The notes beneath the pieces are model-generated. The model was given only the letters and a program-made list of their open reading frames with translations, had not been told where the DNA came from and did not search any database. A program made the position numbers and the translations under genes. Positions 44,031 through 61,127 of a DNA stretch of 64,000 nt are shown one piece after another (within the stretch, counting starts at the first letter, position 1; every line of letters begins with the position of its first letter). The stretch spans positions 230,915-294,914 of the IMG/VR virus record IMGVR_UViG_3300027621_000003, one strand, 5' to 3'.

Positions 44031-44052
44031 TTTTAATTATTATTATTTTATG

Positions 44053-44835: not shown

Positions 44836-44851
44836 ATTAATGTTTAATTAG

Positions 44852-45427: not shown

Positions 45428-46068
45428 TTTTTGTATATTTCATATTTTGATAAGTCGGGATAAGGTAATTCTAAATCCGTATTATGTTTTTTTGACCCAT
45501 CTAAATTATAAAATTGGGTCATCATCAATAATCCTCTCGCTGCGAGTTCTGGCATCATATAAAAATTCCAACCCAACATATCAAAATTATCATCATGATA
45601 TGAACACTCTCTTCTTCCACTAAATCTTGCTCTTTTAAACCATAACATTGCCTGATAATCATCGGTAATAATAGCTCCACCTTTACTTAATTTTAAAGTT
45701 TTATATGGACCTGTAAATGAAAGACACATATGAGACTTTGAGATATACATATCAGCAGTAAATCTTAAAGCAGAATCCCAAACATTACTTGGTGATAGTT
45801 GATAAGCCCCCTTAATTGTTTCACCTTCAACAGGTGTAAAATTAACTTTTAATCCCGCATGAATAATTTCACAAGGAACTGATGGATACGTCTTTGATGG
45901 ACAATCTACTTTATCCGATGTTAAACTTTGTTTTATGTTCTTTTCATAATATAATGCTAAAAACAAAGCGTTACTCATATTGTCTAATGCAATTGCGTAA
46001 GGTGCTCCTGTGTAATCACACAATGCTCTTTCAAAATCTTCTGTTATTTTATGTACTCCTTGTGCCAT
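45424..46068 (-). CDS. DegT/DnrJ/EryC1/StrS PLP-dependent sugar aminotransferase (short form)
   Basis: VWDSA, LSFTGPYKTL (catalytic Lys), GGAIITDD, GWNFYM; only 214 aa. Confidence 0.8.
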   Translation of the reverse strand: MAQGVHKITEDFERALCDYTGAPYAIALDNMSNALFLALYYEKNIKQSLTSDKVDCPSKTYPSVPCEIIHAGLKVNFTPVEGETIKGAYQLSPSNVWDSALRFTADMYISKSHMCLSFTGPYKTLKLSKGGAIITDDYQAMLWFKRARFSGRRECSYHDDNFDMLGWNFYMMPELAARGLLMMTQFYNLDGSKKHNTDLELPYPDLSKYEIYKK

Positions 46069-46069
46069 A

Positions 46070-47899
46070 TTAAATTAATTTAAGATATTTTTTAATTTTA
46101 TCAACATCATTGTGTAAAGGTACTAATGACAATATAAGTGATTTTGTAATAATTTTTATCTTCTCAAAATCATCACCAACTTGTGTTTTAAAATACTCCA
46201 ACATCATATTCTTATATGATTTTTTTATTTTTTTATCCATCAATATTTCATCATACCCAATCAAAGATTGGTATATTTTGGCATAATCATAAAGATATAA
46301 CCCATAACAAGTTTTTTTATCCCCAACCATACCTCTAACATCCACAAACTTTATATCCTCACTCTCACTTAACATAATATTACTAAAAACACAATCACCA
46401 TGTATCATAACATTTTTATACCCCTGAGACTCAATTTTAATTAACTCTTTTTCAATTTGTAATACCTGATTATCTGTAATACCATATGATTTATAATCAT
46501 ACATCTTAACCCTTTCCACAAATTTTTTACTTAAGTTTGGATAATCAAAATGAGTTTCATCACTTTCAAGGTTACTATGTAATAATTTAATTTTTTTCAT
46601 CAATAATTGAAGGTGTTCGATGGTTAAAATATTATTAACATACATTGTACTAAAATTGATACCTTGTATCATTTCCAATTCCACACTATTATCAGAATAT
46701 GTTAACATTTTTGGAAATAACTTTTTAATTTCTTCAGTTCCATTATCCACAACCCATTTATAATATTCTATTTCACCTTGTAACTTTATGTCATCGGATT
46801 CTTTAATAAAAGTCTTCCCAATTTTAACTTCATTAAAATGTCTTGGTGTCACATCTTCCATATAAAACCCTAAAGTTTTATTTAAATCTGTCTTTGGGTT
46901 TACCATTAAATCATCAATATAAAAATGAGCGTATGGTTTTCCAAAATAAATTTCATCATAAGGTATGTTATACTTTTCTAAAGTATCTATAGTAATCTTA
47001 CCAATATCTGCAATAACAGCACCCACATTACCACCATGTGTTCTCATTCTTCTAGCAGTATAAATTATAATCGTATGACCCTTTTCTTTAAGTTTTTTTA
47101 AATAATTGATTGTGTCATAAATTGGTTCAACAGTTGTATAATCACCATCAACTTTTGGATATGTTACCAATGTATTATCTAAATCAAAACAAAATCTTTT
47201 CTTAGATATCTCATATGTTTTTGAAAACTGAATAATTTGTTGTGGTGTTCCTAACACATAAAAATCATTAACTTTAATTGGTATAAATTGTTCACCATTT
47301 TCAATCATTTTACTAATAACTTGAGAGGTGTATAATTCTTTTTCAACATCAAAACCTATTTCAAGTATTTGTTTTTTTAACTTTTCAGAATCCTGAAACA
47401 CATAACATCCACTGTTAGCATTATTTGAAATTTTAATCTTTTCTTTAATGTTTGTAATAATATTATCTTTGATTTGAATATACGAATATATTGGATTTGG
47501 GTTTTTTGAATCAAAGTATAAAACTGAATTTCCCTCAATTTTTTGTATTTTTTCTATTATATTCTCATCATACCATGTATCTCCATCTAACACAACAATT
47601 TTACCGTTAATATTAAAATAATCTAATCCTTTTAATATTGTTTCGGAGGCTCCTTTTGTGTCAGGAATTGGAGTTAATTTAATATTTGGGTACTTTGAGT
47701 TAATAATCTCACTAAAATTATAATACTCCAAACATTCATTATATGGGATATATATACTGTCCTGGTCACTAACATCTAAGGAATCTAACAACCAAAATAT
47801 TATTTCTTTACCCAAAACTTTAATCAAAGGTTTTGGCATATGGTACCCATAATCACTGAATCGTTTTCCAATACCGCCTAAAGGAATTAATATATTCAT
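46070..47899 (-). CDS. Three-domain fusion: nucleotidyltransferase + HAD phosphatase + APH/choline-kinase-like kinase
   Basis: GGIGKRF..PKPL; FDLDNTL..YTARRM..GKP..YIDD; IHGDCVFSN..FVDVRG. Confidence 0.8.
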   Translation of the reverse strand: MNILIPLGGIGKRFSDYGYHMPKPLIKVLGKEIIFWLLDSLDVSDQDSIYIPYNECLEYYNFSEIINSKYPNIKLTPIPDTKGASETILKGLDYFNINGKIVVLDGDTWYDENIIEKIQKIEGNSVLYFDSKNPNPIYSYIQIKDNIITNIKEKIKISNNANSGCYVFQDSEKLKKQILEIGFDVEKELYTSQVISKMIENGEQFIPIKVNDFYVLGTPQQIIQFSKTYEISKKRFCFDLDNTLVTYPKVDGDYTTVEPIYDTINYLKKLKEKGHTIIIYTARRMRTHGGNVGAVIADIGKITIDTLEKYNIPYDEIYFGKPYAHFYIDDLMVNPKTDLNKTLGFYMEDVTPRHFNEVKIGKTFIKESDDIKLQGEIEYYKWVVDNGTEEIKKLFPKMLTYSDNSVELEMIQGINFSTMYVNNILTIEHLQLLMKKIKLLHSNLESDETHFDYPNLSKKFVERVKMYDYKSYGITDNQVLQIEKELIKIESQGYKNVMIHGDCVFSNIMLSESEDIKFVDVRGMVGDKKTCYGLYLYDYAKIYQSLIGYDEILMDKKIKKSYKNMMLEYFKTQVGDDFEKIKIITKSLILSLVPLHNDVDKIKKYLKLI

Positions 47900-48978
47900 T
47901 TTAATATAAATCTATCTTTAATTAATTCAAAATTATCATTATTAACTTTTTTAAGGTAAACATTTGAACCGTCTTTATGTGTAACTTTTGACATGAATAT
48001 CATGTTGTTAGTTCTATCAATAATCTCATAACACCAAAACCCTTGTTTTAATTCAACATGTTTATAATATCCCGTATTAGACACAACATCAACCTCCGCC
48101 ATGTCGTAATCCCTATTTAAATAAAAAATAACAAGTTTAGTTGGGTCTGTCTTGTGTCCTTGACCAATATCCAATTTACATATTTTTGGAATATCTTTCC
48201 ATTTGTCTGTCCATTCACCCGAAGATGATATTCGGTCAAATTGTGATTTTGTAAATTTATTTCTAATTGGTCCTTCATATATTTTACCAAAAACATTTTC
48301 ATTTGAATTGTATTGAAATATCATTGATAATACATACTCAGCCCATTTACCCGAATATCCTATCTCACGACATAAGTTCCAATATTCTTCATCATTTTTA
48401 ACAAATGAAAAATCACCTATTGTTTTATTTGAATATCCACAAAAATGAACATCAATTAACGATTGGTGTTGACCCGCCCATTTACCTTCTTTTCTTTTTC
48501 CGTAAATCAAATAATCTTCAGTTTCAAAAGTATTCAAATCATTTAAGACCTCACTAAATTCTTCGTTATCAAATAACATGTCGTATTCAATCCTAAAAAC
48601 TTTTGAATACCCTTCTTTATTTGCCTCTTGAAGTCCGTATATGAATCCATTATATACATTTGCCACATGGTCAGAAACACCAATAAATGGCATCCAATTT
48701 TCTAAAACACCACTTTCAATTTCATAATAAACATATGGTTTATTATATAGATTTGAATTTATAATTTCTTCAGGTGGATAACCAACCATAAAACCATCAA
48801 GATATTCTCTATAAAAATCAACTTGGTCATCAATTCCCCAAGAATTACCAAACTTATTAATTAACATTATTTTACGAGACCCATCCAACTTTCTAAGTTG
48901 TTGAATCAACTCTAAGGTTACATCCGCTTTATCTTTAGATGATAAATAACCATCAATGACATATAATATATTACTCAT
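47896..48978 (-). CDS. Putative glycosyltransferase-like protein with C-terminal beta module
   Basis: RIEYDML DxD-like motif; inside the glycan cluster. Confidence 0.45.
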   Translation of the reverse strand: MSNILYVIDGYLSSKDKADVTLELIQQLRKLDGSRKIMLINKFGNSWGIDDQVDFYREYLDGFMVGYPPEEIINSNLYNKPYVYYEIESGVLENWMPFIGVSDHVANVYNGFIYGLQEANKEGYSKVFRIEYDMLFDNEEFSEVLNDLNTFETEDYLIYGKRKEGKWAGQHQSLIDVHFCGYSNKTIGDFSFVKNDEEYWNLCREIGYSGKWAEYVLSMIFQYNSNENVFGKIYEGPIRNKFTKSQFDRISSSGEWTDKWKDIPKICKLDIGQGHKTDPTKLVIFYLNRDYDMAEVDVVSNTGYYKHVELKQGFWCYEIIDRTNNMIFMSKVTHKDGSNVYLKKVNNDNFELIKDRFILK

Positions 48979-49927
48979 ATTGAAAATTCTGATTTTTTGC
49001 AAAAATGGCTCCTACATTATTTGAATTATGTAAGAAAAATTCTTTAGTAATTTCAAATCCGTTTTGAATTAATTTTTCAGTTATTTGATTTCTAATTTCA
49101 ATAGTATGAAATTCCAAAGATATTTTTTTTATTTTTTTTAGACTGTGTTCTTGAATTGTTTTAAAAATGTCTTGTTCCGCCCCCTCACAATCTAATTTTA
49201 AATAATCAATGTGTGATAAGTTAAATAAATCAAAGAGTTTTTCAATATCTATAGTTAAAACATTTGTTTCTAAATTTATATCTTTACCAATAATTTCATT
49301 AAATTTTTTCAAATGAGAACAAGCACTTATTAAATCAGAATAACAAAATGTCATAACCCCATTTTCATCCGAAATTGCCAAATTATAACAACTAACATTT
49401 TCTAAATTTTTTGTATTTTCTAATAAAGTTATGTAGTTTTTAATATCAGGTTCCAAACAAATTATTTTTTTTGGTTTAAATTGGGTTGCATAAACTGAAA
49501 AAAAACCAATATTAGCACCGACATCAACTACAATATCATTTTCACTAATGTTAACAATTTCATCATAATATACGTTGTCATAAAAAATCTCTTTAAAGGT
49601 ATAAAAATTTAATCGATTACTATAGGAACTTTTAAAAACATTATCGTTAATTATTACCAAAGAAGGTTGATTTCCAAAATCAATTTCTAAGTTAATAACA
49701 CCATCAATACTTTCCGCACGAAGAATAGATTTACCTAAATTTGATAAACAACTTACGGGTGCCGCAATCCAATAAGTACACAACTCATCCATATAGTCAT
49801 ATTTTGATTTATAGATTAATGTATTACTATTAATATCAATTAAAGAAATTTCAACCGAACTATTTTTTGTGTCTTTTACTGAAAAATAAACTTTTTCATT
49901 TTCTATTTTTTTAAAATATAATACCAT
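48971..49927 (-). CDS. N-terminal beta module plus FkbM methyltransferase
   Basis: VDVGANIG, LEP, IDYLKLDCEGAE, LEFH. Confidence 0.88.
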   Translation of the reverse strand: MVLYFKKIENEKVYFSVKDTKNSSVEISLIDINSNTLIYKSKYDYMDELCTYWIAAPVSCLSNLGKSILRAESIDGVINLEIDFGNQPSLVIINDNVFKSSYSNRLNFYTFKEIFYDNVYYDEIVNISENDIVVDVGANIGFFSVYATQFKPKKIICLEPDIKNYITLLENTKNLENVSCYNLAISDENGVMTFCYSDLISACSHLKKFNEIIGKDINLETNVLTIDIEKLFDLFNLSHIDYLKLDCEGAEQDIFKTIQEHSLKKIKKISLEFHTIEIRNQITEKLIQNGFEITKEFFLHNSNNVGAIFAKNQNFQYE

Positions 49928-49955
49928 GATTTTATTTAAAGTTTTAATGTTGTGT

Positions 49956-50687
49956 TTAGTCTTGATTATCTATATGAACTATAACTTGATTATAATATTC
50001 AAGAAAATGTTCATTCCATAAATCCCATTTTACATCAATATTGTCTATTGAATAAACTTGATGATTTGGAAATTCTTTAAGATAGGTATCTCTAAAATGT
50101 CTGAATTCTTCAACATAGTTATGATTCTCAAGTCGTAAATGCCATTCCCCAACAATTTTTTTAACATTATTTTTAATATATCCCATATTATCATCATTGA
50201 ATATATGGTATTCCCCACCTTCACAATCTGTTTTAATAAAATCAATTTTATCAACACCAAACAAATCAACAAACGTTTTGAACGTTATCCCTTCCATTTC
50301 GGTTTCTCCACCAAAAAGTTCATCATTTTTAACAATTGAATTTTTATCGGATATACCCTTATTTATATGGGTCACGGGATTTCCAATAGTATTTTTTACT
50401 AATGTTTTAAATTCTCTATAACTTGGTTCAAAACAAAAAACATGTTTTGGTTTTTTATCTAAAATTGAATATGTAAATGGTCCGACACTCGCACCAATAT
50501 CTAATACTATATCCCCTTCTTTAACTTCAAAGAATTTCTCATAACAACTATCAACATAAATTTCTCTGGTAATAGTGTCTTTATGGAATTGTCCCATTTG
50601 TTTATTATTATCATCCCCAAGTATCCGATATACTTCATTTGTCTCATCCATCCAACCCCAATCAAAATTATCAAGTGTTTTTTTCAT
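49956..50687 (-). CDS. FkbM methyltransferase
   Basis: LDIGASVG, FEP, IDFIKTDCEGGE, GEWH. Confidence 0.88.
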   Translation of the reverse strand: MKKTLDNFDWGWMDETNEVYRILGDDNNKQMGQFHKDTITREIYVDSCYEKFFEVKEGDIVLDIGASVGPFTYSILDKKPKHVFCFEPSYREFKTLVKNTIGNPVTHINKGISDKNSIVKNDELFGGETEMEGITFKTFVDLFGVDKIDFIKTDCEGGEYHIFNDDNMGYIKNNVKKIVGEWHLRLENHNYVEEFRHFRDTYLKEFPNHQVYSIDNIDVKWDLWNEHFLEYYNQVIVHIDNQD

Positions 50688-50751
50688 ATACGTGTTTTTA
50701 TAATTGAAATATAGATTATATATAGTATATTTCAATAAACAAAACACAATT

Positions 50752-53043
50752 ATGATGAAAATATTTGCTCACGGTTCTTATGTTGGAAACACAGGTTACA
50801 ATCAACACACAAGGGATTTTTTTAGGCATTTGTCAGAACATGCACAAATTAAATTTAGGAATTTTACTGTGGGTAACACATGGAAAGGATTTAATTCAAC
50901 CCCTCACGATAATGAACCATATATTGATGATGTAGATAAAAAATTATTATACGAACAAATTTTATGGAATGAAGACCGTACTCGTGGTAATCATAAAATG
51001 TATATTGATAATTCAAAAGAATTCTTACCCGATGTTAATATTGTTCTGTCAGAAACAAATCATCATATATTTTATGATACTTATTATGGTCCAAAAATTG
51101 CATATAATGTTTGGGAGTCAACATTACAACCCTTATCATACTTTGAAGAATTAAAGAAATTTGATGAGTTTTGGGTACCATCTAAATGGCAAAAAGAATG
51201 TACCATAAAACAAGGGTACGACCCAGAAAAAATTAAAATAGTTCCTGAGGGTGTTGATATTCATACATTTTTCCCTGAAACTGTCGAACCATTAGATGAA
51301 TACAATGACGGTAGATTTAAATTTTTATTATTTGGTCGATGGGATTATCGTAAATCAACAAAAGAAATAATTGAATGGTTTTTAAAAACATTTTCCGAAG
51401 ACGAACCAGTTGATTTGGTGGTGTCTATTGATAATATGTTTGGAGAACATTTGGACGGATTTAAAACTACTGAAGAAAGATTAGAACATTATGGTTTAAC
51501 AGATAAAAGAATTAAAATTGTACACTTTCCTAAAAGAGAAGACTATATAAAATACCTTAAAACTGGTCATGTATTTGTATCTTGCGCAAGGTCTGAAGGA
51601 TGGAATCTACCATTAATAGAATCAATGGCTTGTGGTACACCTTCAATATATTCTAATTGTTCGGGTCAATTAGAATTTGCAGAAGGTAAAGGATTTCCTG
51701 TTAATGTTTTACATGAAACACTTGCAGACGCTGATTCATATGCAAGATATAAAATGAGTGAATTACCTGGAAATTATTATGAACCTGATTTTAATGAATT
51801 ATCAAAAGTAATGAGATATGTTTATGAAAATTATGATGAGTGTAAAATAAAATCATTAAAAGAATCTGAAGAAATTAGAAATAATTTTAATTGGGAGCAT
51901 GTTGCAGAAATTGGAATCAAAACTTTAAATGATTTTATGGAAAGAAAGCCTTGGTTAAATAAAAAAATTAAAGAAAATAAAATTACCGTAACTTATTTAG
52001 ATGGTCCAAAAGTTGAAATTTCAGGTGATGAAAAAAAAGAATATTTTGTTGAATTTATTAATAAGGATACTGATAAAGTTATACATTCACAAACAATATC
52101 TAATAATATGTGGGTGGCTAGTAATAAAAAATACTACATACCTTGGGTAATTAAAATAAATGGTCAAGTTTATGATGTTTTTGATTTAAAAGATAAATCA
52201 GTAATAATTTCTTTGGAGTCAAAATCATTAGGCGATACAATAGCTTGGTCACCATATGTTGTTGAATTTCAAAAAAAACATAATTGTAAAGTTTATTTTT
52301 CAACTTTTAAAAATGAATTTTTTGAAGATTTAGAGTCTTATAAAAATATTGAATTTATAAAACCTGGCGATTCTCGTAATTGTTACTCCGTTTATAGAAT
52401 TGGTTGGTTTAAAAAAGATAACACTTGGGAAAATTTTGATAATCACCCAAATCAACCTAATCTGATTCCACTACAACAAACGGCATCAGATATTCTTGGT
52501 TTAGAATTTAAAGAATTAAATTTTGGTATTAATTTTAAAAAGAAAGATAGACCAATTAAAAACAAATATGTTGTGTTTGGTCCAAATGCAACTGCGGGTT
52601 GTAAAGAATGGGATTATAATAATTGGGTATCATTGTCTAAATTAATCAAAGAACTTGGTTATGACGTTGTTACATTAACTCAACACCCGTATAACATAGA
52701 AGGTGTTATTAATGTTTGGGGGGAACCTTTAGATGAGGTAGCTAATTATTTATATCACGCAGAAACATTTATTGGGTTAGGTTCAGGTCTATCTTGGTTT
52801 AATTGGGGTTTAGGTAAACACACATATATGATTAATGGTTTTGCTAAATCAGAACACGAATTTACTTCAAATGTAACAAGAGTATATAATGAGGGTGTTT
52901 GTATTTTTTGTTGGAATGACGAAGTGTTTGTTTTTGATAGTGGTGATTGGGATTGGTGTCCTGTTTATAAAGGAACTAAAAAACAACATATTTGTCAAAA
53001 ATCAATAACACCACTAAAAGTTTTTAACATTTTAAATTTATGA
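50752..53043 (+). CDS. GT4 glycosyltransferase fused to AAH/TibC-type O-heptosyltransferase
   Basis: GT4: RKST, EGWNLPLIESMACGTP. AAH part: beta module, SLGDTIAWSPY, CIFCWN...WCP...CQKSITP Cys cluster. Confidence 0.8.
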   Translation: MMKIFAHGSYVGNTGYNQHTRDFFRHLSEHAQIKFRNFTVGNTWKGFNSTPHDNEPYIDDVDKKLLYEQILWNEDRTRGNHKMYIDNSKEFLPDVNIVLSETNHHIFYDTYYGPKIAYNVWESTLQPLSYFEELKKFDEFWVPSKWQKECTIKQGYDPEKIKIVPEGVDIHTFFPETVEPLDEYNDGRFKFLLFGRWDYRKSTKEIIEWFLKTFSEDEPVDLVVSIDNMFGEHLDGFKTTEERLEHYGLTDKRIKIVHFPKREDYIKYLKTGHVFVSCARSEGWNLPLIESMACGTPSIYSNCSGQLEFAEGKGFPVNVLHETLADADSYARYKMSELPGNYYEPDFNELSKVMRYVYENYDECKIKSLKESEEIRNNFNWEHVAEIGIKTLNDFMERKPWLNKKIKENKITVTYLDGPKVEISGDEKKEYFVEFINKDTDKVIHSQTISNNMWVASNKKYYIPWVIKINGQVYDVFDLKDKSVIISLESKSLGDTIAWSPYVVEFQKKHNCKVYFSTFKNEFFEDLESYKNIEFIKPGDSRNCYSVYRIGWFKKDNTWENFDNHPNQPNLIPLQQTASDILGLEFKELNFGINFKKKDRPIKNKYVVFGPNATAGCKEWDYNNWVSLSKLIKELGYDVVTLTQHPYNIEGVINVWGEPLDEVANYLYHAETFIGLGSGLSWFNWGLGKHTYMINGFAKSEHEFTSNVTRVYNEGVCIFCWNDEVFVFDSGDWDWCPVYKGTKKQHICQKSITPLKVFNILNL

Positions 53044-53936
53044 AAAATTGTTTAATCACTTTTAATGACGCATCAACTGGTTTAGGTGATGTAATCGCAT
53101 TAATGCCATATTTAGATAAATTTAGAGTATCCCAAAACCTTGAAATTTATTTTAAAGTAAAGAATATTTTTTTTTCTGAATTATTTAAAAAGACATTTCC
53201 TGAAATAATTTTTATAGATGAAACTGATAATAAAAATTACGACAAAGAAATCATACTTAAACATAAATGGGATAAACCTCTTCAACAAGTTTTTGCTGAA
53301 CAATTAGGATTTATCAATTCTGAATATATTAGACCAAAAGTTGATGATGTTTTAACAGATAGAACTATTAAAAATAAATATATTGTGATTAGTATACAAT
53401 CTACATCCCAACTTAAATATTGGAACCATGTAAATGGTAAACAAGAACAACTCACCTCTAAGAATTGGGATATATTATGTAAAATGTTACGAAAATCAGG
53501 ATATACCCCAATATGTGTTGATAATTATGAAAGTTTTGGAATTCCTAATTTTAGAAATTATGTACCAAAAAGTTGTGTAAAAAAATTAGGTTTACCATTA
53601 AAAGATGTTATGGAAATTATAAAACATTGCGAATTCTTTATTGGATTGTCATCAGGTATTTCTTGGTTAGCACATGCTATGAACAAACCTGTTGCTATGA
53701 TTTCAAATTTTACAGAAGATTGGCACGAATTTGATTTAAATATAAATGATTATAAAAGAATAATAAATAAAAGTGTATGTCATGGTTGTTGGAATATTGT
53801 TGGTAAAGAATTTGATTTTGAATACGATGATTGGTATTGGTGTCCCAAGCATAAGGACACACCAAGGCAATTTGAATGTCATACATCAATAACACCTGAA
53901 ATGGTATATGAAGAAATTAAAGATTGGTTATTATGA
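53040..53936 (+). CDS. AAH/TibC-type O-heptosyltransferase (GT9-like)
   Basis: GLGDVIA, LKYWN, FIGLSSGISWLA, CHGCWN...WCPKHKDTPRQFECHTSITP. Confidence 0.85.
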   Translation: MKNCLITFNDASTGLGDVIALMPYLDKFRVSQNLEIYFKVKNIFFSELFKKTFPEIIFIDETDNKNYDKEIILKHKWDKPLQQVFAEQLGFINSEYIRPKVDDVLTDRTIKNKYIVISIQSTSQLKYWNHVNGKQEQLTSKNWDILCKMLRKSGYTPICVDNYESFGIPNFRNYVPKSCVKKLGLPLKDVMEIIKHCEFFIGLSSGISWLAHAMNKPVAMISNFTEDWHEFDLNINDYKRIINKSVCHGCWNIVGKEFDFEYDDWYWCPKHKDTPRQFECHTSITPEMVYEEIKDWLL

Positions 53937-54310
53937 ATATAGAAGTATCACACGGGGAGATTGTTGATAAGTTAACAATCCTTCAAATTAAAAAAGAAAA
54001 CATTACTGACCCAATTAAATTGGATAATATTGTAAAAGAATATAACTATCTTTTATCTGTAGTTGAGAATGATTTGGGAATTTCAACTGAATCTCCTGAG
54101 TATTTGGAACTATTATCTATTAACAAAGAACTTTGGGTTATTGAAGATGATATTAGAGATAAAGAAAGAGTTAAAGAATTTGATGAGGATTTTGTTAAAT
54201 TGGCACGTTCGGTTTATTACACAAACGATGTTCGTGCTAAAATTAAAAAAGAAATTAATTTGAAATATTCTTCAGGATTTGTTGAAGAAAAATCATACCA
54301 ATCTTACTGA
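53933..54310 (+). CDS. DUF6165-like protein
   Basis: GEIVDKLTILQIK, INKELWVIEDDIR, LARSVYYTNDVRA, EEKSY. Confidence 0.75.
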   Translation: MNIEVSHGEIVDKLTILQIKKENITDPIKLDNIVKEYNYLLSVVENDLGISTESPEYLELLSINKELWVIEDDIRDKERVKEFDEDFVKLARSVYYTNDVRAKIKKEINLKYSSGFVEEKSYQSY

Positions 54311-55537
54311 TAGTTCTTTTGATTGTAGGATGTTATCCTCAATAGAACAATAAGTCCAAGAACCATATCTACCAATAGAAAATAACCCATTAGGGTTATT
54401 TTTTTTGCCCCAACTACTATAAACTTCTTTTGATTCTTTGGTAATATGAACATAGGCAGGATTCATAACAATCATTTGGTGGTCTACTAAATTATGGTCA
54501 TTTATAACCCCCACCCTTGATAAATCTTCTAATATCTTATTCAACAAATCCTCCTCAATAACTCTGTCAGTTTTATCCAAACCAATCTCAACGTACAAAC
54601 TCATTTTATCTGTACCGAAGATATTGTTATAGAATCCAACTCTATAGAATATTTCATCATTAGGATAATACACCCAATTTGAACTGATGTCAGTTGGTTT
54701 ATCAAACCCTAAGTTAAATACAACTACTTTGTTTGATGAAAGGTTATCAACCTTCTCACCTGTAAGTTTCATAAAGGTATCAAACGGCATTGTATTCACC
54801 AATTTATTAAACTTGATATATCCGTTATTTGTTTGAGCAATTTTGTTTTCAAGGTCAATACTGATGATTTCAGTATCCAATAAAATATTATCTTGGTTTA
54901 CTCGTTTGAGTAATGACTTAACAAATTCAACACTACCACCTGTTGGGTATATGAATGTGTCATTATAAGATTCAGACTTGTTTTTGTTTTTGAGTTGAGT
55001 TAATAAGTCATCAAAGTTTGTGGGTTTTGGAAAGAACCTTCCCATTGCATCATAATCCAAATTATTCAAATCACAAGCATATAACTTTTGATTATAAGGT
55101 ATGATGAACTTATTACAAATTGACTCTCCTAGCGTGTTTTTAACAAAGTCTGTGAATGTATTAACCTCACCATTTCCAGTGTTCCTCAGGTCATATAAAC
55201 ACTCAACAAACTCATCTGTTGGTAATTGGTCTATGTTGTTTTGAAATGGAAAATCTATGTATCGGTCTTTATAATATATGTGACTTCTTTTATTAACTGT
55301 AACCACGTCACACTCAATATTCTCTAATACATAATCTTTAATTTCTTGATTGTTAAAGTGAAAGAAGTGACCAGAATAATCCCATACAAAACCATTTCTA
55401 ATTGTTGTTTTGCAATATCCCCCAACCTCAAAATCCTTTTCAACAATTAAATAATTATCCGTATCCAAAAAGGATGCTAATGAAAGTCCTGTTATACCAG
55501 CACCAATAATTAATATGTCACAATTTGTTTGATTCAT
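54293..55537 (-). CDS. FAD-dependent UDP-galactopyranose mutase-like enzyme
   Basis: GAGITG, DYSGHFF, FPFQNNI..LP, FIIPYNQKL, YPTGG, GRYGSWTY follow UGM-family motif order. Confidence 0.7.
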   Translation of the reverse strand: MNQTNCDILIIGAGITGLSLASFLDTDNYLIVEKDFEVGGYCKTTIRNGFVWDYSGHFFHFNNQEIKDYVLENIECDVVTVNKRSHIYYKDRYIDFPFQNNIDQLPTDEFVECLYDLRNTGNGEVNTFTDFVKNTLGESICNKFIIPYNQKLYACDLNNLDYDAMGRFFPKPTNFDDLLTQLKNKNKSESYNDTFIYPTGGSVEFVKSLLKRVNQDNILLDTEIISIDLENKIAQTNNGYIKFNKLVNTMPFDTFMKLTGEKVDNLSSNKVVVFNLGFDKPTDISSNWVYYPNDEIFYRVGFYNNIFGTDKMSLYVEIGLDKTDRVIEEDLLNKILEDLSRVGVINDHNLVDHQMIVMNPAYVHITKESKEVYSSWGKKNNPNGLFSIGRYGSWTYCSIEDNILQSKELSVRLV

Positions 55538-56088
55538 TAATCTTTATAATATGTCCCAAGTTCTCTACCGTGAATATCTTTTGTTCTTTCAAATCTTGGA
55601 TTACCAATTAAGAACATAAATCTCTCATGACTAAAAGTTTCAACATCATGAACAATTAACATTCCGTTATCTTTAACTTTATAGAACCAAAATGCAACCA
55701 ATTCAGGAATTACCTCTTCAAAGTGATATGAGTCGTGGAATACAACATCATATTTTGTTTCATTGTTTAATGCGTAAAGTCCTTCTTGGACAATCCAATT
55801 AACATTAAAATCTTTACACAAAGTTTCTCGTTTATCTTTAAACCCTTTGTGTCCGTCATTATCATATGATGTAACATCAAGTCCTGCCAAACATAATGAA
55901 AATGTTCCATGTCCACCCAAACTACCAACCTCACATGCTGTTCCACCTTTATATATTTTTGACTTCAAATAAATCTCTTTAATGTGAGAAACATCTGTTG
56001 TATTAACAACCGAATAATCAAGTTGTTCTATCTTTAGTAGATTCATCGCATCTTGTGCGGTTAAAAAATCATTTCCGTTAAAACTCAT
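55537..56088 (-). CDS. Class I SAM-dependent methyltransferase
   Basis: EVGSLGG, YDVVFHDSYH, GMLIVHD. Confidence 0.75.
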   Translation of the reverse strand: MSFNGNDFLTAQDAMNLLKIEQLDYSVVNTTDVSHIKEIYLKSKIYKGGTACEVGSLGGHGTFSLCLAGLDVTSYDNDGHKGFKDKRETLCKDFNVNWIVQEGLYALNNETKYDVVFHDSYHFEEVIPELVAFWFYKVKDNGMLIVHDVETFSHERFMFLIGNPRFERTKDIHGRELGTYYKD

Positions 56089-56158
56089 AACATAATAATA
56101 TACAATATTTAAAAATAACAAATAGACATTTTTTTGTTTTAAACTAACATTAATAATA

Positions 56159-56776
56159 ATGAGTATCTACATCATAACCCCCTGTAGTAGGGTTGAACAT
56201 CTTGAAACAATTTCTAAAACAATACCTAATGAATGTATTTGGGTTATTGTTTATGACTCAAACCATAATGACAAAATCCTACCTTATGGTGATATAATTT
56301 TAAGACCAAAAAATGTAAGTGGTAATTATGGTAAGCCTCATATAAATTATGCTTTGGATAATTTAAAATTGACATATTCAGATTGGGTCTATGTCTTAGA
56401 TGATGATAATATTATTCACCCTGAATGGTATGAAAATGTACAATCATTGTGTAATGATTATTATAATGTTTTAAGTTGGGGTCAGTTGTGGAATGATGAC
56501 ACAATGAGATTAAGACCCACTAAACATATGGTGTTCAGAGCTATGGACCAAGCAAGTTATATGTGGAGATATGGATTTCACCCAACCGTTAGATTTGATG
56601 AATCATATTTTGGTGATGGTACGTTTGCAGAAAAATTAGGACAAAACTCCCATTGTATTAACAAGTATCTTAGTTATTACAATTATCTATCTTTGGAATC
56701 TTTCACAAATGAAGAAAAATTAGAATTTGATAGGGGAGTTTTATCTTACTTATCAAGTAAAAACATTTTTATTTAG
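56159..56776 (+). CDS. GT2-like glycosyltransferase
   Basis: IITPCSR, YVLDDDN, 'GDGTFA'. Confidence 0.75.
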   Translation: MSIYIITPCSRVEHLETISKTIPNECIWVIVYDSNHNDKILPYGDIILRPKNVSGNYGKPHINYALDNLKLTYSDWVYVLDDDNIIHPEWYENVQSLCNDYYNVLSWGQLWNDDTMRLRPTKHMVFRAMDQASYMWRYGFHPTVRFDESYFGDGTFAEKLGQNSHCINKYLSYYNYLSLESFTNEEKLEFDRGVLSYLSSKNIFI

Positions 56777-58635
56777 TCGTGTTTAATCCCTAAATTATCT
56801 TGGAAATGTTTTTGATTAGTCAACAATCTTTCTTTTTGACTTTCAAATCTAAAATCATTTAATATTTGCAACAAATATTGATAACCTTCTTCAAATCTTT
56901 TTGTCCAAAAACAAGATACTGATAACTCATCATTATTATAATCTCCATACATATTTTCTTGGATGAATAAAATGTATTTTTCTTTTACATTATTAATGTT
57001 TTTGGATTTTGCGGTTTTTAAATACGAATACCCCTTTTCAAACTCACCGATTAAATTACAATATTTTCCAATATGAAAATGTGGTTCCGCTCTATCATTA
57101 CATAACTTTATTGCCACTAACATTTCAGTTTCAATTTTACTTAAATCATAATTAAGTTTCATCATACAAAGAGCAATCCTCATTTGTGATTCAAAAATCT
57201 CTTCAATCCACCCATCATTTAATTTTGTATATAATCGGTACCATTTAATTGCCTCGTCATACATTTCAGAATCTTGATAACTTTGAGCTGTGTAAAAAAC
57301 TGACCTACTATTTAAATTATCTGGGTCCGATAATAAAGTATCAAAAAATTGTTTTTTTAATTTTTCAGCATCATATAAGAATTTATTTGGGTCAAAAGCT
57401 CTTGAACCAATACCTTCTCCTGATACATAATGATTTCTATTTGTAATATCTTTTGTGATAAAAATTCCTTTTTCTTCACATTTAATAGTTGTATGTGCAA
57501 CACCACAAAATCTCCATGTTAATCTGTTATTAAAAATTATTAGAGCTTTCCATTTTATATCACCACGAGTTACGTTCATATAATAAGCATCTTGACCAAT
57601 GTCATCTTTGGTAAACTCTAAACCATTAACCAATAAATCATCAGCATCCAAATGTAAAACATAATCAGCTTTATCTTTAGCCCGTTTCATCATTAAAGTT
57701 TTATTGTGGTCAAATCCAACCCACTTATCAATGTGTAATTCACCAGGTATTCCTTTTTCTTCAAAGAAATTTTTGACAATCTCACACGTCCTATCAGTTG
57801 AGCCTGTATCACACACAACCCAATAGTCAATATGTTTATAAACAGATTCTAATGTGTTCTGAATACAATGTTCTTCATTTTTACACATAGTTGCAAAACA
57901 CATGGTTGGTCCATCTTTTTTGATTTCAACAGGTTCGTTTTTCCAAACTGCGGATGTAACACTATTTTCTTCAGTATCAGGATTTTCTTTAGTATAGTAA
58001 TATAATGCCAATGAAATCCTTGACATACCATTAGGTGTATTCAAGGGATGTGGATGACCGTGATATGTGTCAGCTTCAGTATTGAAAATAACTACACGGT
58101 TAAATAAGGGTTGAATATCTTGAACCATTGTTGTCATATCTTTATCCCATAATTGTAATGAACCACCCCATTCTTTATTCCAATCTTTATTAAGATATAC
58201 TAATAGATTTATTCTTCTGTAATTATTAGTTACCGCATGTTTTCTTGAGTCGGCATGAATTGATAATTTACCACCTGATTCAATCTTATGCATCCCACCA
58301 CCTAATAATGTTGGGTCGGCAATTAAACCTTCAATCCCTGTTAATTTTTCTAACATACTAATAACATCAGGTGAATTAAAATAATTCAATATTAATTTGG
58401 TGTTAATTGGTAATGTTGTATCCCCATCATTGTTCCAAGGCGAAAAGAATTTTTTAACTTGATGGTCTTTTGAATAATCACTATTATCCCAACCCCAATT
58501 ATTGTGGTTTCTAAAATCATCAATAACACCATTCAACAATGATGGTGGTAAAAAATTATCAACAACCATGTGTGGAAATGGTTGTGCTTGTCTATACTCG
58601 TTAATTTCTTTTTCGGTTACTGTAAAATTTATCAT
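56773..58635 (-). CDS. Fusion: 2OG-Fe(II) oxygenase + GT2 glycosyltransferase + TPR
   Basis: IHAD...YHGHP...RISLALY; MCKNEEH..CDTGSTD..HLDADD; FYTAQSY..AIKWY..RAEP TPR-like helices. Confidence 0.85.
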   Translation of the reverse strand: MINFTVTEKEINEYRQAQPFPHMVVDNFLPPSLLNGVIDDFRNHNNWGWDNSDYSKDHQVKKFFSPWNNDGDTTLPINTKLILNYFNSPDVISMLEKLTGIEGLIADPTLLGGGMHKIESGGKLSIHADSRKHAVTNNYRRINLLVYLNKDWNKEWGGSLQLWDKDMTTMVQDIQPLFNRVVIFNTEADTYHGHPHPLNTPNGMSRISLALYYYTKENPDTEENSVTSAVWKNEPVEIKKDGPTMCFATMCKNEEHCIQNTLESVYKHIDYWVVCDTGSTDRTCEIVKNFFEEKGIPGELHIDKWVGFDHNKTLMMKRAKDKADYVLHLDADDLLVNGLEFTKDDIGQDAYYMNVTRGDIKWKALIIFNNRLTWRFCGVAHTTIKCEEKGIFITKDITNRNHYVSGEGIGSRAFDPNKFLYDAEKLKKQFFDTLLSDPDNLNSRSVFYTAQSYQDSEMYDEAIKWYRLYTKLNDGWIEEIFESQMRIALCMMKLNYDLSKIETEMLVAIKLCNDRAEPHFHIGKYCNLIGEFEKGYSYLKTAKSKNINNVKEKYILFIQENMYGDYNNDELSVSCFWTKRFEEGYQYLLQILNDFRFESQKERLLTNQKHFQDNLGIKHD

Positions 58636-58640
58636 AAGTT

Positions 58641-59888
58641 TTATTTATAAATGTAGTTTAATATTTCTTCTTCACTATGAAATTTCCTAATAAAAATGTG
58701 GTTTTGAAATTTTTGTGAACAATTCTCATCTTCAACCCAATTCCAATCATGTTTACCCATTTCTATTATTTTTTCATGTATTTGTTTATCGTAATAATCT
58801 CTAATTAATCTTGCTCTTCGGTTTATATCAATTGAGTTATTATCAACAGTAGTGTTTTTATTATTATATTGTATGTATAATACTTTTTTTACATGAATTA
58901 TTTTTGTATTAAGAAATGTCCTTATAATTAATTCCAAATCATCAGCAATTGGTGTATTTTTATTATGTCCACCAATTTCAAGATATTTTTTTCTTTCCCA
59001 CATTCTTACGTGGTCAGGCATACTAATATTGAATCTAATAGTTAACGGATTTATATCAGGGTACCAATGAGCAATTAAATCTTTACCATCAACATTTGTC
59101 CAACTATGACCAGCATATCCAAAATCAAAGTAATTATCATATCTTCCATACCAATCACCTGAAACATTATTGTCATACGTTCTCATATTACCATCCTCAT
59201 ACATTTCACACACATCACTATAAAGAAATCCGGCATCAGGATATTGTAAAATTGCATCATTTGATATTTCTAAACATTGTGATGTTAAAACATCATCATG
59301 GTCTAATTCAACTAACCAATCTCCATCACATAACATAGCAACCCTATTTTTAGCCAATCCAATATTACCACCACTTAATGGATATATTCTATGTGGTTTA
59401 ACACGATAATCTTTATCTTTGAGACCCATTAAAATGTTCCAAGTATTGTCATCAGGTGAATCATCAACAATAACCCATTCCCAATCAGTAAAAGTTTGAT
59501 TTACAATACTTTCATAAGTTCTTAAAATTCTTTCACCCGTATTGTAAGTTGGTGTGAATATTGAAAATTTTGGTCTTATATTTTGACAATTAATAAAAGT
59601 TCCTTGTTTAACAACAACATTAGCCAATTCAATATCACCAATAATATTATCATAATGAATATATTTTGAATTTAATATTTTATCATTAATTGTTATTTTT
59701 TTACCAAACGAAATTATTAAATCGGGCAAGTACTTTGAATAATCTTGGATTAGATTCTCAATATTTTCCAATGAATAAATTGTAACATATTCCAATAAAT
59801 TTTCCTCACAATAAATGTGTGATTGCAATTCATTAATACCTTTTCTATCCCAATTGTATATAATTGCACTGGGTTTTTTTGTTCTCAT
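58641..59888 (-). CDS. GT2 glycosyltransferase with N-terminal extension
   Basis: FSIFTPTYN, IVDDSPD, ELDHDD, ADDLEL. Confidence 0.88.
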   Translation of the reverse strand: MRTKKPSAIIYNWDRKGINELQSHIYCEENLLEYVTIYSLENIENLIQDYSKYLPDLIISFGKKITINDKILNSKYIHYDNIIGDIELANVVVKQGTFINCQNIRPKFSIFTPTYNTGERILRTYESIVNQTFTDWEWVIVDDSPDDNTWNILMGLKDKDYRVKPHRIYPLSGGNIGLAKNRVAMLCDGDWLVELDHDDVLTSQCLEISNDAILQYPDAGFLYSDVCEMYEDGNMRTYDNNVSGDWYGRYDNYFDFGYAGHSWTNVDGKDLIAHWYPDINPLTIRFNISMPDHVRMWERKKYLEIGGHNKNTPIADDLELIIRTFLNTKIIHVKKVLYIQYNNKNTTVDNNSIDINRRARLIRDYYDKQIHEKIIEMGKHDWNWVEDENCSQKFQNHIFIRKFHSEEEILNYIYK

Positions 59889-59893
59889 AAAAA

Positions 59894-60478: not shown

Positions 60479-60479
60479 A

Positions 60480-61067: not shown

Positions 61068-61091
61068 TTTTTTATATTAATTTGTTAATAA

Positions 61092-61099
61092 CAAATATA
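61092..61099 (-). promoter_or_regulatory. Bacteroidota-type -7 promoter element (TATATTTG)
   Basis: TAnnTTTG upstream of ATG 61067, heading the hydroxylase/GT2 genes. Confidence 0.6.
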
Positions 61100-61127
61100 A
61101 TAACTTATTTAAAAAAACCAAGTTAAC

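What the first reader, a model, noticed from the sequence alone, without database searches (positions are those of the whole stretch)
50752..54310. Tandem AAH/TibC-type protein heptosyltransferases with intact Cys metal site, one fused to GT4
Both proteins end in CxxCW...WCP...C (CIFCWN..WCP..C; CHGCWN..WCPKH..FEC), matching the four-Cys iron site of bacterial autotransporter heptosyltransferases, and both carry the (S/G)LGD motif. The first also has the preceding beta domain and an N-terminal GT4 domain. Established: AAH/TibC are iron-containing ring enzymes that hyper-heptosylate Ser in adhesin repeats. Inference: they act on phage fibre/adhesin repeats such as the GSS/GTS tract. A DUF6165-like gene follows. 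The three genes form a plus-strand block inside a minus-strand cluster, suggesting a module inserted as a unit.
Basis: partly seen in the sequence, partly recalled or inferred. Interest (0 to 1): 0.7.

Follow-up and report, generated by a model that had tools for sequence, protein, structure and literature searches.

The report
Phage TibC-type glycosyltransferases beside serine-rich fibre
A freshwater jumbo phage carries a three-gene operon with two enzymes of the family that pathogenic E. coli use to coat adhesins with heptose, and across many unrelated phages such enzymes sit beside giant Gly-Ser-Ser repeat fibre genes, which suggests these phages sugar-coat their own fibres.

Summary
Window 50752-54310 (+) is a three-gene operon whose genes are joined by ATGA stop/start overlaps.

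- **P1** (763 aa) is a GT4 domain, then a TibC-like beta-barrel, then a BAHT catalytic domain. It scores 229.8 bits against TIGR04414 (cut-off 200).
- **P2** (298 aa) is the catalytic domain alone. It scores 193.5 bits. Its AlphaFold model matches TibC 4RAP at TM 0.83.
- **P3** is a DUF6165 four-helix bundle.

The catalytic Asp, Thr, Lys and Trp and all four iron-finger Cys are invariant. The adenine-contacting Arg286 of TibC is Val in both proteins. The genome has no autotransporter target repeat and no GmhA.

The host genome is a 295-kb freshwater jumbo phage. The operon lies in a 23-kb island of soluble glycan enzymes that abuts a collagen-like fibre gene carrying at least 167 G-[S/T]-S triplets.

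The main new result is comparative. Of 79 viral loci fetched only by that repeat, 20 carry a BAHT ORF within 7 kb. Of 79 control loci fetched by the ordinary collagen repeat, 1 does (p = 6e-6).

The best reading is cytoplasmic O-glycosylation of the phage's own Ser-rich fibre. The sugar donor, enzyme activity and oligomeric state are untested. The claim that the module was inserted as a unit is not supported.

The parts
50752..53043 (+). P1, 763 aa: GT4 domain fused to a full TibC-type (BAHT) glycosyltransferase
   Evidence: TIGR04414 229.8 bits against a cut-off of 200. TibC 4RAP E 2e-40. More than 2300 metagenomic homologues of about 760 aa.
50752..51930 (+). P1 GT4 (retaining GT-B) domain, with an E-x7-E motif at residues 282-290
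   Evidence: Pfam Glycos_transf_1 44.1 bits. phrog_2170 glycosyltransferase E 2e-24 over residues 102-393. Motif located.
51991..52161 (+). P1 TibC-like N-terminal beta-barrel (residues about 414-470)
   Evidence: Pfam TibC_1st 26.5 bits, borderline against a 27-bit cut-off. Aligned to TibC residues 28-97.
52195..53043 (+). P1 BAHT catalytic domain. Key residues are D495, T614, K618, W682 and C717/720/736/748. V663 stands in place of TibC R286 and G677 in place of P300. The thumb hairpin is shortened.
53040..53936 (+). P2, 298 aa: BAHT catalytic domain alone, without the beta-barrel. Key residues are D17, T122, K126, W209 and C247/250/268/280. V190 stands in place of R286 and S204 in place of P300. 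The thumb hairpin is kept.
   Evidence: TIGR04414 193.5 bits. AF2 model pLDDT 87, matching 4RAP at TMq 0.83 and E 4e-19. More than 1800 homologues.
53933..54310 (+). P3, DUF6165, 125 aa, a four-helix bundle. Its start overlaps the P2 stop (ATGA).
   Evidence: Pfam 37.3 bits. AF2 model pLDDT 91. Lies directly upstream of GT9 genes in 4 of 5 bacterial loci examined. Fused to a BAHT domain in 1 of 49 multidomain representatives.
62035..63999 (-). C-terminal part of the candidate acceptor, a collagen-like fibre. It holds 14 G-[S/T]-S triplets, about 143 G-X-Y triplets and a Peptidase_S74 chaperone domain. The gene runs off the window and contig end. It continues at genome coordinates 2-2248 with a 300-aa N-terminal domain and at least 153 more G-[S/T]-S triplets.
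35376..37679 (-). Alternative candidate acceptor: a 767-aa Pro/Thr-rich mucin-like protein with 51 [TS]P[TS] motifs
48971..50747 (-). Two FkbM-type methyltransferase genes directly upstream, transcribed divergently. In related phages these lie between the P1 and P2 homologues, or are fused to BAHT domains.
46070..47899 (-). 609-aa protein with nucleotidyltransferase, HAD-IIIA phosphatase and APH-type kinase domains. It is a possible supplier of an activated donor; its specificity is unknown.
38902..62035 (.). 23-kb island of soluble glycan- and protein-modifying enzymes: 5 FkbM methyltransferases, 2 hexapeptide acyltransferases, a short DegT, 3 GT2, a UGM-like flavoenzyme, 3 P4H-like oxygenases, a SET protein and a DUF6625 protein. 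It encodes no membrane protein.

Best explanation
P1, P2 and P3 form a phage-encoded cytoplasmic protein O-glycosylation module.

**Proposed mechanism**
- The two BAHT catalytic domains are inverting GT-B enzymes. Asp495 (P1) and Asp17 (P2) act as the catalytic base. Thr, Lys and Trp hold the beta-phosphate and the sugar. A Cys4 metal finger is the structural and substrate-contact element.
- These domains transfer a heptose, or a similar sugar, from a nucleotide sugar directly to Ser/Thr hydroxyls of the phage's own fibre before virion assembly. The most likely target is the tract of at least 167 G-[S/T]-S triplets in the collagen-like fibre.
- The fused GT4 domain then extends the sugar.
- The neighbouring FkbM methyltransferases and acyltransferases decorate the chain.
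- DUF6165 is an accessory partner of GT9-fold enzymes. Its role is unknown.

**What is shown and what is inferred**
- Shown: family membership, fold, conservation of catalytic and Cys residues, operon structure, genomic association with G-[S/T]-S genes, and absence of membrane or export components.
- Inferred: the acceptor, the sugar, the order of steps, and the effect on the fibre (stiffening or stabilising a proline-free triple helix, or shielding it).
For: **Family and fold**
- TIGR04414 scores are 229.8 and 193.5 bits. LPS heptosyltransferase models score below 25 bits.
- TibC is the only strong PDB match.
- The P2 model matches 4RAP at TM 0.83 and rmsd 2.7 A.

**Residues**
- D110, T226, K230, W305 and C339/342/358/370 are invariant in 240 close homologues. 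They are nearly invariant in about 150 distant representatives.
- These are the residues the TibC study shows to be needed for activity and iron binding (PMC4358343).

**Association with the proposed acceptor**
- 20 of 79 viral loci fetched only by the GSS/GTS repeat have a BAHT ORF 19-7100 bp from the repeat ORF.
- Among loci with full 10-kb flanks the figure is 13 of 23.
- 1 of 79 collagen-repeat control loci has a BAHT ORF. Fisher p = 6e-6, or 2e-5 after removing duplicates.
- These BAHT domains are diverse, with 15 groups at 80% identity.
- In the reverse direction, 7 of 12 phage loci fetched by BAHT have an ORF with at least 15 such triplets. Microcystis phage Mel-JY01 has 143 triplets and megaphage LR756501 has 27.

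**Context**
- The island abuts the fibre gene.
- None of its 25 ORFs has a transmembrane segment, apart from one hydrophobic stretch in the flavoenzyme. No flippase, polymerase or priming transferase was detected.
- Kin loci place the module beside neck, tail-fibre and terminase genes.

**Fusions**
- BAHT domains are fused to GT4 in 26 of 49 multidomain representatives, to FkbM in 14 and to GT2 in 6.

**Coupling and expression**
- Both gene junctions are ATGA overlaps.
- Identical fragments occur in four lake metatranscriptomes.
Against: - There is no biochemical evidence.
- Known BAHT acceptors are Ser residues in beta-helical strand-loop-strand repeats, not collagen-like triplets. No such repeat exists in the phage.
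- TibC lacking its beta-barrel is inactive, yet P2 has none.
- Arg286, whose mutation abolished or largely diminished TibC activity, is Val in both proteins.
- The phage lacks GmhA, and the host is unknown, so ADP-heptose supply is uncertain.
- 59 of 79 repeat loci show no BAHT, although many of those are truncated. Some BAHT loci (L003, L010, L028, LR756504) show no repeat gene within the flanks.
- The loci are not phylogenetically independent, so the p-value overstates the evidence.
- The island also has a SunS-like GT2 and other glycosyltransferases that could be the priming enzyme.
Confidence: 0.5

Rival explanations
1. The module, and the island as a whole, remodels host surface glycans (LPS core, O-antigen or capsule) during infection. 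One possible purpose is to block superinfection. This is what has been proposed for glycan gene clusters in jumbo cyanophages.
For: - Iyer et al. 2021 (PMC7824862) interpret similar clusters as capsular-polysaccharide modification systems.
- The BAHT fold is GT9-like.
- In bacteria, DUF6165 sits beside ordinary GT9 genes in LPS-type contexts.
- The island is rich in sugar-modifying enzymes.
Against: - The proteins score below 25 bits on the WaaC and WaaF-like models, against 190-230 bits on the BAHT model.
- The island encodes no membrane protein, flippase, polymerase, ligase or polyprenyl-phosphate transferase.
- BAHT genes are specifically enriched next to G-[S/T]-S fibre genes.
- In kin, the module sits among virion genes.
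Confidence: 0.15
2. The BAHT domains glycosylate a different acceptor. One option is the Pro/Thr-rich mucin-like proteins, of which there are five in the genome. Another is that a BAHT domain adds a sugar onto a glycan chain started by a different enzyme, for example the GT4 domain (as GtfA does on serine-rich repeat adhesins) or the SunS-like GT2.
For: - PT-rich ORFs flank the island in the window (35376-37679), at genome coordinates 2293-4314, and in kin L009 and L011.
- The presence of two paralogous BAHTs suggests two acceptors or two steps.
- GT9 enzymes normally act on sugar acceptors.
- The 620-aa GT2 has weak SunS similarity, E 1e-7.
Against: - PT-rich ORFs are not enriched with BAHT beyond the window's own kin. 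In the repeat set, 2 of 7 PT-rich loci have a BAHT ORF.
- Stand-alone BAHTs of about 400 aa, without a GT4 domain, still sit next to G-[S/T]-S genes in L051, L052, L066, L067, L071 and L108.
Confidence: 0.2
3. The enzymes modify host proteins, such as host adhesins or envelope proteins, or they play a non-catalytic assembly role like that reported for the BAHT relative BimC.
For: - BAHTs in bacteria act on exported adhesins.
- A paper in the first literature search reports BimC of Burkholderia, a protein that works with the autotransporter BimA in actin-based motility; it matched the terms TibC and heptosyltransferase in its full text (PMC11499645). That BimC is a BAHT relative, and the role attributed to it here, rest on my own recollection and were not checked.
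Against: - Every catalytic residue is strictly conserved across hundreds of phage homologues.
- The domain is fused to further glycan enzymes.
- The gene is associated with a phage gene, not a host gene.
Confidence: 0.08

Closest known systems
TibC / AAH, the bacterial autotransporter heptosyltransferases (BAHT, TIGR04414; PDB 4RAP and 4RB4)
   Same: - Same fold (TM 0.83).
- Same catalytic Asp, the same Thr/Lys/Trp sugar-phosphate contacts, and the same Cys4 iron-finger spacing.
- P1 also has the N-terminal beta-barrel.
- They are soluble cytoplasmic enzymes that glycosylate proteins directly from nucleotide sugars, which is what a phage needs for virion proteins made in the cytoplasm.
   Different: - They are encoded by a phage.
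- There is no autotransporter and no strand-loop-strand target repeat.
- Arg286 (adenine contact) is Val.
- P2 lacks the beta-barrel that TibC needs for activity.
- The autotransporter-linked enzymes form a clade of 5 among 163 leaves in an unrooted tree of the wider family.
LPS heptosyltransferases WaaC / WaaF (GT9)
   Same: GT-B fold of the GT9 type, and a weak Pfam PF01075 match of 21-22 bits.
   Different: - TIGR02193 and TIGR02201 score 19-24 bits against cut-offs of 170-185.
- The structural match is only TM 0.5-0.6.
- These enzymes have no Cys4 finger.
- The phage proteins have no lipid A-core context.
Glycosylated collagen-like surface filaments: BclA / BclA3 of Bacillus and Clostridioides spores, and collagen-like fibrils of giant viruses
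   Same: Gly-X-Y repeats rich in Thr or Ser are O-glycosylated by dedicated glycosyltransferases encoded nearby. Examples are SgtA on BclA3 (PMC7157674) and the giant-virus glycan clusters (PMC9614988).
   Different: The enzyme families differ. None of those systems is reported to use a BAHT. Those repeats are GPT-type, not G-S-S.
Serine-rich repeat adhesin glycosylation (GtfA/GtfB of the accessory Sec system) and virion glycosylation in mycobacteriophages
   Same: Long Ser-rich repeats, or virion proteins, are O-glycosylated in the cytoplasm by GT-B/GT4 enzymes. This comparison rests on my own knowledge; mycobacteriophage virion glycosylation is cited in the papers.
   Different: - Those systems have no BAHT domain and no collagen-type repeat.
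- The hosts are Gram-positive bacteria or actinobacteria.
- Here the GT4 domain is fused to a BAHT.

Membership tests
BAHT (TIGR04414, AAH/TibC) | Score above the curated whole-protein HMM cut-off of 200 bits | tested here: met
   P1 scores 229.8 bits and 231 bits in the genome search. P2 scores 193.5 bits, just under the cut-off, because it covers only profile positions 85-372.
BAHT (TIGR04414, AAH/TibC) | Catalytic base Asp110 and the sugar/phosphate contacts Thr226, Lys230 and Trp305 | tested here: met
   Present in P1 (D495, T614, K618, W682) and P2 (D17, T122, K126, W209). Invariant in 240 homologues.
BAHT (TIGR04414, AAH/TibC) | Arg286 contacting adenine N1, which gives specificity for the ADP-sugar | tested here: not met
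   Val in P1 and P2. The long-form family has V or I. The short-form family has V, T, S or L. Arg is found in only 59 of 138 wider representatives, but in all 3 autotransporter-linked enzymes.
BAHT (TIGR04414, AAH/TibC) | Four-Cys iron finger (C339, C342, C358, C370) | tested here: met
   All four Cys, with the same spacing, are present in P1 and P2 and invariant in homologues. Iron binding itself cannot be tested with these tools.
BAHT (TIGR04414, AAH/TibC) | N-terminal flattened beta-barrel, which TibC needs for activity | tested here: inconclusive
   P1 aligns to TibC residues 28-97, and Pfam TibC_1st scores 26.5 bits against a 27-bit cut-off. P2 has no beta-barrel at all.
BAHT (TIGR04414, AAH/TibC) | Beta-hairpin thumb with Phe368, and assembly into a dodecameric ring | tested here: inconclusive
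   P2 keeps the hairpin (model strands 165-168 and 171-174) and has Phe at the positions of TibC 265 and 368. P1 lacks about 10 residues of the thumb and has His at the position of 368. Oligomeric state cannot be tested here.
BAHT (TIGR04414, AAH/TibC) | Overall fold of TibC | tested here: met
   P2 model (pLDDT 87) against 4RAP: TMq 0.83, rmsd 2.7 A, E 4e-19. The next best matches are GT9 enzymes at TM 0.5-0.6. P1 was not modelled.
BAHT (TIGR04414, AAH/TibC) | Pairing with an autotransporter that carries strand-loop-strand O-heptosylation target repeats (TIGR04415) | tested here: not met
   No TIGR04415 match in the 295-kb genome. In plasmids the true BAHTs lie next to AIDA-type genes.
BAHT (TIGR04414, AAH/TibC) | Heptosyl transfer from ADP-heptose to protein Ser | not testable with these tools
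   Needs biochemistry. There is no GmhA/SIS gene in the phage.
LPS heptosyltransferase GT9 (WaaC/WaaF) | Score above the TIGR02193 / TIGR02201 cut-offs of 185 / 170 bits | tested here: not met
   Scores are 18.8-24.4 bits.
GT4 (Glycos_transf_1) | Pfam gathering score and the E-x7-E motif | tested here: met
   PF00534 scores 44.1 bits against 26.4. The EGWNLPLIE motif is at P1 residues 282-290.
DUF6165 (PF19662) | Pfam gathering score | tested here: met
   37.3 bits against 27. 52-59% identical to bacterial members.

The most novel reading that the evidence does not exclude
BAHT-type enzymes and giant G-[S/T]-S collagen-like repeat proteins together form a widespread, previously unrecognised phage 'glyco-collagen' system.

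- Proline-poor triple-helical fibres would be hyper-O-glycosylated in the cytoplasm. Each Ser/Thr would carry a heptose-based, methylated oligosaccharide. The fibre could be stabilised or shielded by this coat.
- On this reading, the adhesin heptosyltransferases of enteric pathogens would be a small offshoot of a much larger, mainly viral enzyme radiation.
- Variation at the adenine-contact position would reflect diversification of the sugar donor.
Probability: 0.3. Interest if true: 0.8.

Novelty: new variant of a known kind. Interest (0 to 1): 0.66.

Why it matters
- BAHTs are known only as virulence-associated modifiers of autotransporter adhesins. Here the same catalytic machinery turns up in thousands of environmental phage genes. 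It is fused to chain-extending and methylating enzymes and linked to a specific class of fibre gene.
- If the link is real, it gives a concrete enzyme-substrate pair for studying virion glycosylation outside actinobacteriophages.
- It would also explain why some phages carry kilobases of Gly-Ser-Ser repeats.
- It would offer soluble, lipid-carrier-independent protein O-glycosyltransferases with new acceptor rules, and perhaps new donor rules.
- It cautions against reading every phage glycan island as host-surface remodelling.

Tried and rejected
- **Complex prediction of P2 with DUF6165.** Score 0.00, which the tool reports as no verdict. It is evidence neither for nor against binding.
- **DUF6165 fold searches.**
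  - Foldseek against the PDB gave nothing below E 0.8.
  - VIA-align's best match was Z 8.2, to an archaeal OST1 cytoplasmic four-helix bundle. That is below the level meaningful for helical bundles.
  - My guess that the protein might be MazG-like is therefore unsupported.
- **GmhA/SIS search in the genome.** None found.
- **Donor from the 609-aa tri-domain enzyme.**
  - It gave only weak or ambiguous matches. These were HddC-like at E 1e-3, capsule phosphatase EcbF/BcbF at 82 bits against a cut-off of 162, and a PHROG labelled 'phosphoheptose isomerase' that matched the HAD region.
  - Its kinase part had no PDB match.
  - Its product is left open. Heptose, or a LicC/LicA-like CDP-alcohol, are both possible.
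- **Close relatives among cultured phages.** Megablast found none. Only distant kin exist: Mel-JY01 and the LR7565xx megaphages.
- **PHROGs.** It has no family for P2 or for DUF6165.
- **tRNAs.** None in the window.
- **Promoter and terminator scan.** Hits were at or below chance.
- **Rooting the BAHT tree with GT9 outgroups.** This failed because too few positions aligned, so the tree is unrooted and no direction of transfer is claimed.
- **Literature.** No paper in the library links BAHTs with phages or collagen-like fibres.
- **Compositional sign of recent insertion.** None.

Full report
**What is there**

The window is the last 64 kb of a 294,914-bp virus record that is rated 98% complete. 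GC content is about 30%.

Its only recognisable relatives among deposited phages are distant: Microcystis phage Mel-JY01 and the LR7565xx megaphages.

Near-identical DNA occurs in at least 14 runs, 13 labelled freshwater metagenome and one crustacean metagenome. Fragments identical to the three genes occur in four lake metatranscriptomes. DNA carry-over in those libraries is not excluded.

At 50752-54310 three plus-strand genes are joined by ATGA stop/start overlaps.

**P1**

P1 is 763 aa and has three parts.
- A GT4 domain. Pfam Glycos_transf_1 scores 44.1 bits, and an E-x7-E motif lies at residues 282-290.
- A TibC-type beta-barrel. Pfam TibC_1st scores 26.5 bits against a cut-off of 27.
- A BAHT catalytic domain. 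TIGR04414 scores 229.8 bits against a cut-off of 200, and TibC 4RAP matches at E 2e-40.

**P2**

P2 is 298 aa and is the catalytic domain alone.
- TIGR04414 scores 193.5 bits over profile positions 85-372, and 4RAP matches at E 9e-33.
- Its AlphaFold model (pLDDT 87, pTM 0.89) superposes on TibC at TM 0.83 and rmsd 2.7 A.
- The next best matches, WaaC, WaaF and another GT9 enzyme, reach only TM 0.5-0.6.
- LPS heptosyltransferase HMMs score below 25 bits.

**P3**

P3 is a DUF6165 protein (37.3 bits) predicted as a four-helix bundle with pLDDT 91. It has no informative structural match.

**Residue-level comparison with TibC**

The defining residues come from the TibC structure paper (PMC4358343).
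- Asp110 is the catalytic base.
- Thr226, Lys230 and Trp305 contact the sugar and phosphate.
- Arg286 contacts adenine N1.
- Position 300 sets D,D- versus L,D-heptose selectivity.
- Cys339, 342, 358 and 370 bind iron.
- A beta-hairpin thumb together with Phe368 builds the dodecameric ring.
- The N-terminal beta-barrel is required for activity.

I aligned P1, P2, 240 close homologues and three plasmid BAHTs that lie next to AIDA-type autotransporters. The results were as follows.
- Asp110, Thr226, Lys230, Trp305 and all four Cys are invariant.
- Arg286 is Val in both window proteins. The long-form family has V or I. The short-form family has V, T, S or L.
- Position 300 is Gly in P1 and Ser in P2. 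Ser is the AAH-like state, which tolerates both heptose epimers.
- P2 keeps the thumb and has Phe at the positions of TibC 265 and 368. P1 has a thumb about 10 residues shorter and His at the position of 368.
- Across about 150 more distant representatives the same pattern holds. Position 286 is Arg in only 43% of them.

The catalytic and metal-site machinery is therefore conserved. Nucleotide specificity and ring assembly may not be.

**How widespread**

- The 760-aa GT4-BAHT fusion has more than 2300 metagenomic relatives. The short form has more than 1800. JGI auto-labels many of them 'autotransporter strand-loop-strand O-heptosyltransferase'.
- An exhaustive profile-free search finds 1121 clusters (at 50% identity) with E <= 1e-3. 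Protein lengths range from about 280 to 1800 aa.
- Among 49 multidomain representatives, the BAHT domain is fused to GT4 in 26, to an FkbM methyltransferase in 14, to GT2 in 6 and to DUF6165 in 1.
- The nearest ESM Atlas clusters to P2 are labelled 97-100% viral.
- PHROGs has no family for P2.
- In an unrooted tree of 163 domains, the autotransporter-linked enzymes form a clade of 5. P1 and P2 fall in separate, well supported clades. They are 34% identical, so they are old paralogues and not a recent duplication.

**Context**

The operon lies in a 23-kb island at 38.9-62.0 kb. The island encodes:
- five FkbM methyltransferases;
- two hexapeptide acyltransferases;
- a short DegT-like protein;
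- a nucleotidyltransferase-HAD-kinase fusion;
- a UGM-like flavoenzyme;
- three GT2 enzymes;
- three P4H-like 2OG oxygenases;
- a SET-domain protein and a DUF6625 protein.

None of these ORFs has a transmembrane segment, apart from one hydrophobic stretch in the flavoenzyme. No flippase, polymerase, ligase or polyprenyl-phosphate transferase was found.

The island ends at a fibre gene at 62035-63999 (-). Within the window that gene holds 14 G-[S/T]-S triplets, about 143 ordinary G-X-Y triplets and a Peptidase_S74 chaperone domain. The gene runs off the contig. The other contig end (genome coordinates 2-2248, minus strand) encodes its N-terminal 300 residues plus at least 153 more G-[S/T]-S triplets. 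The assembly therefore broke inside the repeat.

Pro/Thr-rich mucin-like ORFs lie on both sides of the island.

Related phage contigs carry the same module beside neck, tail-fibre and terminase genes. The P1-P2-DUF6165 trio has the identical layout in L011. P1-P2 adjacency is seen in L009, L029 and L031. The genes are separated by two FkbM genes in L003. P1 stands alone in L010. Mel-JY01 has a single 1226-aa GT4-BAHT fusion.

**Test of the acceptor hypothesis**

- I fetched viral loci using only 200 residues of the GSS/GTS repeat as the query. This gave 79 loci totalling 1.19 Mb.
- I searched their six-frame ORFs with a BAHT HMM. 20 loci have a BAHT ORF (E 1e-24 to 1e-101). It lies 19-7100 bp from an ORF that carries 30-622 such triplets.
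- Among loci with full 10-kb flanks on both sides, 13 of 23 have one.
- A control set of 79 loci (1.20 Mb) was fetched with the adjacent ordinary collagen repeat of the same protein. It contains 1 BAHT locus, L117. L117 is the closest match to the query in the control set and is cut at a contig end.
- Fisher p is 6e-6, or 2e-5 after removing three duplicates.
- The associated BAHT domains are diverse. There are 17 groups at 95% identity and 15 at 80%. They are 28-57% identical to P1 and P2 (34-47% for most). They include stand-alone enzymes of about 400 aa as well as fusions.
- In the reverse direction, 7 of 12 phage loci fetched by BAHT have an ORF with at least 15 triplets within 10 kb. These include Mel-JY01, with 143 triplets in an unannotated frame. 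Megaphage LR756501 has 27 triplets 3.6 kb from its BAHT gene.
- The loci are not phylogenetically independent, so the p-value is an upper bound on the strength of the evidence. Even so, the association is large and holds in both directions.

**DUF6165**

- Bacterial homologues (52-59% identical) lie directly upstream of ordinary GT9 genes in 4 of 5 loci examined, and next to GT4 genes in two others.
- Together with one fusion to a BAHT domain and the ATGA coupling to P2, this marks DUF6165 as a recurrent partner of GT9-fold enzymes.
- Its role is unknown. The complex prediction gave no verdict.

**Interpretation**

The best reading, at confidence about 0.5, is a phage-encoded cytoplasmic protein O-glycosylation module.
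- BAHT domains prime Ser/Thr residues of the fibre's G-[S/T]-S tract.
- The GT4 domain extends the sugar.
- Neighbouring methyltransferases and acyltransferases decorate the chain.

This fits the BAHT chemistry, which is direct transfer from a nucleotide sugar to a protein in the cytoplasm. It also fits the all-soluble island and the gene association.

The sugar is uncertain. Arg286 is lost, there is no GmhA, the host is unknown, and the tri-domain enzyme at 46070-47899 has no assignable product.

A glycan coat could stabilise or stiffen a proline-free triple helix. Glycosylated Thr does this in some animal cuticle collagens. That last point is from my own knowledge and was not tested.

The rivals are:
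- host-surface glycan remodelling, as proposed for jumbo cyanophage clusters (PMC7824862), at 0.15;
- another acceptor or a non-priming step, at 0.2;
- host-protein modification or a non-catalytic role, at 0.08.

- The plus-strand block is real.
- 'Inserted as a unit' is not supported. GC content equals that of the neighbouring genes. The GC-skew flip simply follows the coding strand. Kin show both the same layout and co-directional layouts.

**Novelty**

No paper in the searchable library connects BAHTs with phages or with collagen-like fibres. I rate this a new variant of a known kind: a known enzyme family in a new carrier, with a new architecture and a new probable substrate class.

Noticed in passing
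window 62035-63999 (-) and genome coordinates 2-2248 (L037, -): The fibre gene is split by the ends of the virus record, and the assembly broke inside the (GSS/GTS)n repeat. The 'linear' record is therefore probably a complete, circularly permuted genome. The true number of triplets (at least 167) is unknown.
   Followed up: yes
L008 (Mel-JY01, PP395634.1) 2-3049 (+): A 1016-codon open frame with 143 G-[S/T]-S triplets is not annotated. The record instead annotates minus-strand CDSs (1-651 and 739-2298) over the same repeat. These are probably artefacts of a repeat that stays open in several frames.
   Followed up: partly
window 56773-58635 (-), 60480-61067 (-), 59894-60478 (-): Three P4H-like 2OG-Fe(II) oxygenase genes lie next to the collagen-like fibre gene. 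One of them is a 620-aa fusion of an oxygenase, a GT2 and a helical-repeat region, with weak SunS (peptide S-glycosyltransferase) similarity. They are candidates for hydroxylating and glycosylating the GPQ/GPL part of the fibre.
   Followed up: no
window 35376-37679 (-); genome 2293-4314, 80030-83986, 118987-119991: The genome has several Pro/Thr-rich mucin-like ORFs, each with up to 71 [TS]P[TS] motifs. Two of them flank the glycan island, and kin L009 and L011 have the same. They are possible additional O-glycosylation substrates.
   Followed up: partly
L012, L017, L018, L020 (bacterial MAG contigs), about 6000-7450: In Bacteroidota, Desulfobacterota and Cloacimonadota MAGs the DUF6165 gene is immediately followed by a GT9 (heptosyltransferase-family) gene. 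This conserved pair has no described function.
   Followed up: partly
window 46070-47899 (-): This is a 609-aa fusion of a nucleotidyltransferase, a HAD-IIIA phosphatase and an APH-type kinase. The nearest ESM Atlas clusters are labelled viral, both Uroviricota and Nucleocytoviricota. The product is unknown; it could be an NDP-heptose or a CDP-alcohol.
   Followed up: partly
window 38902-39291 (-); L010 17450-17848: A SET-domain (lysine methyltransferase-like) gene sits in the glycan island and is conserved next to an FkbM gene in a related 390-kb contig.
   Followed up: no
window 45424-46068 (-): This DegT-type aminotransferase is only 214 aa and matches only the N-terminal quarter of the family profile. 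The same short length (214-215 aa) recurs in kin L009 and L011, so it is a conserved short form and not a broken gene.
   Followed up: no
L011 14929-17986: A related phage island carries APS kinase, a sulfotransferase and a small cytidylyltransferase-like gene between the BAHT trio and four Peptidase_S74 fibre genes. This suggests sulfated glycans in that relative.
   Followed up: no
window 49900-55600: Contigs identical to parts of P1, P2, DUF6165 and the next gene occur in four independent lake metatranscriptomes. This is consistent with expression in nature, but DNA carry-over cannot be excluded.
   Followed up: partly
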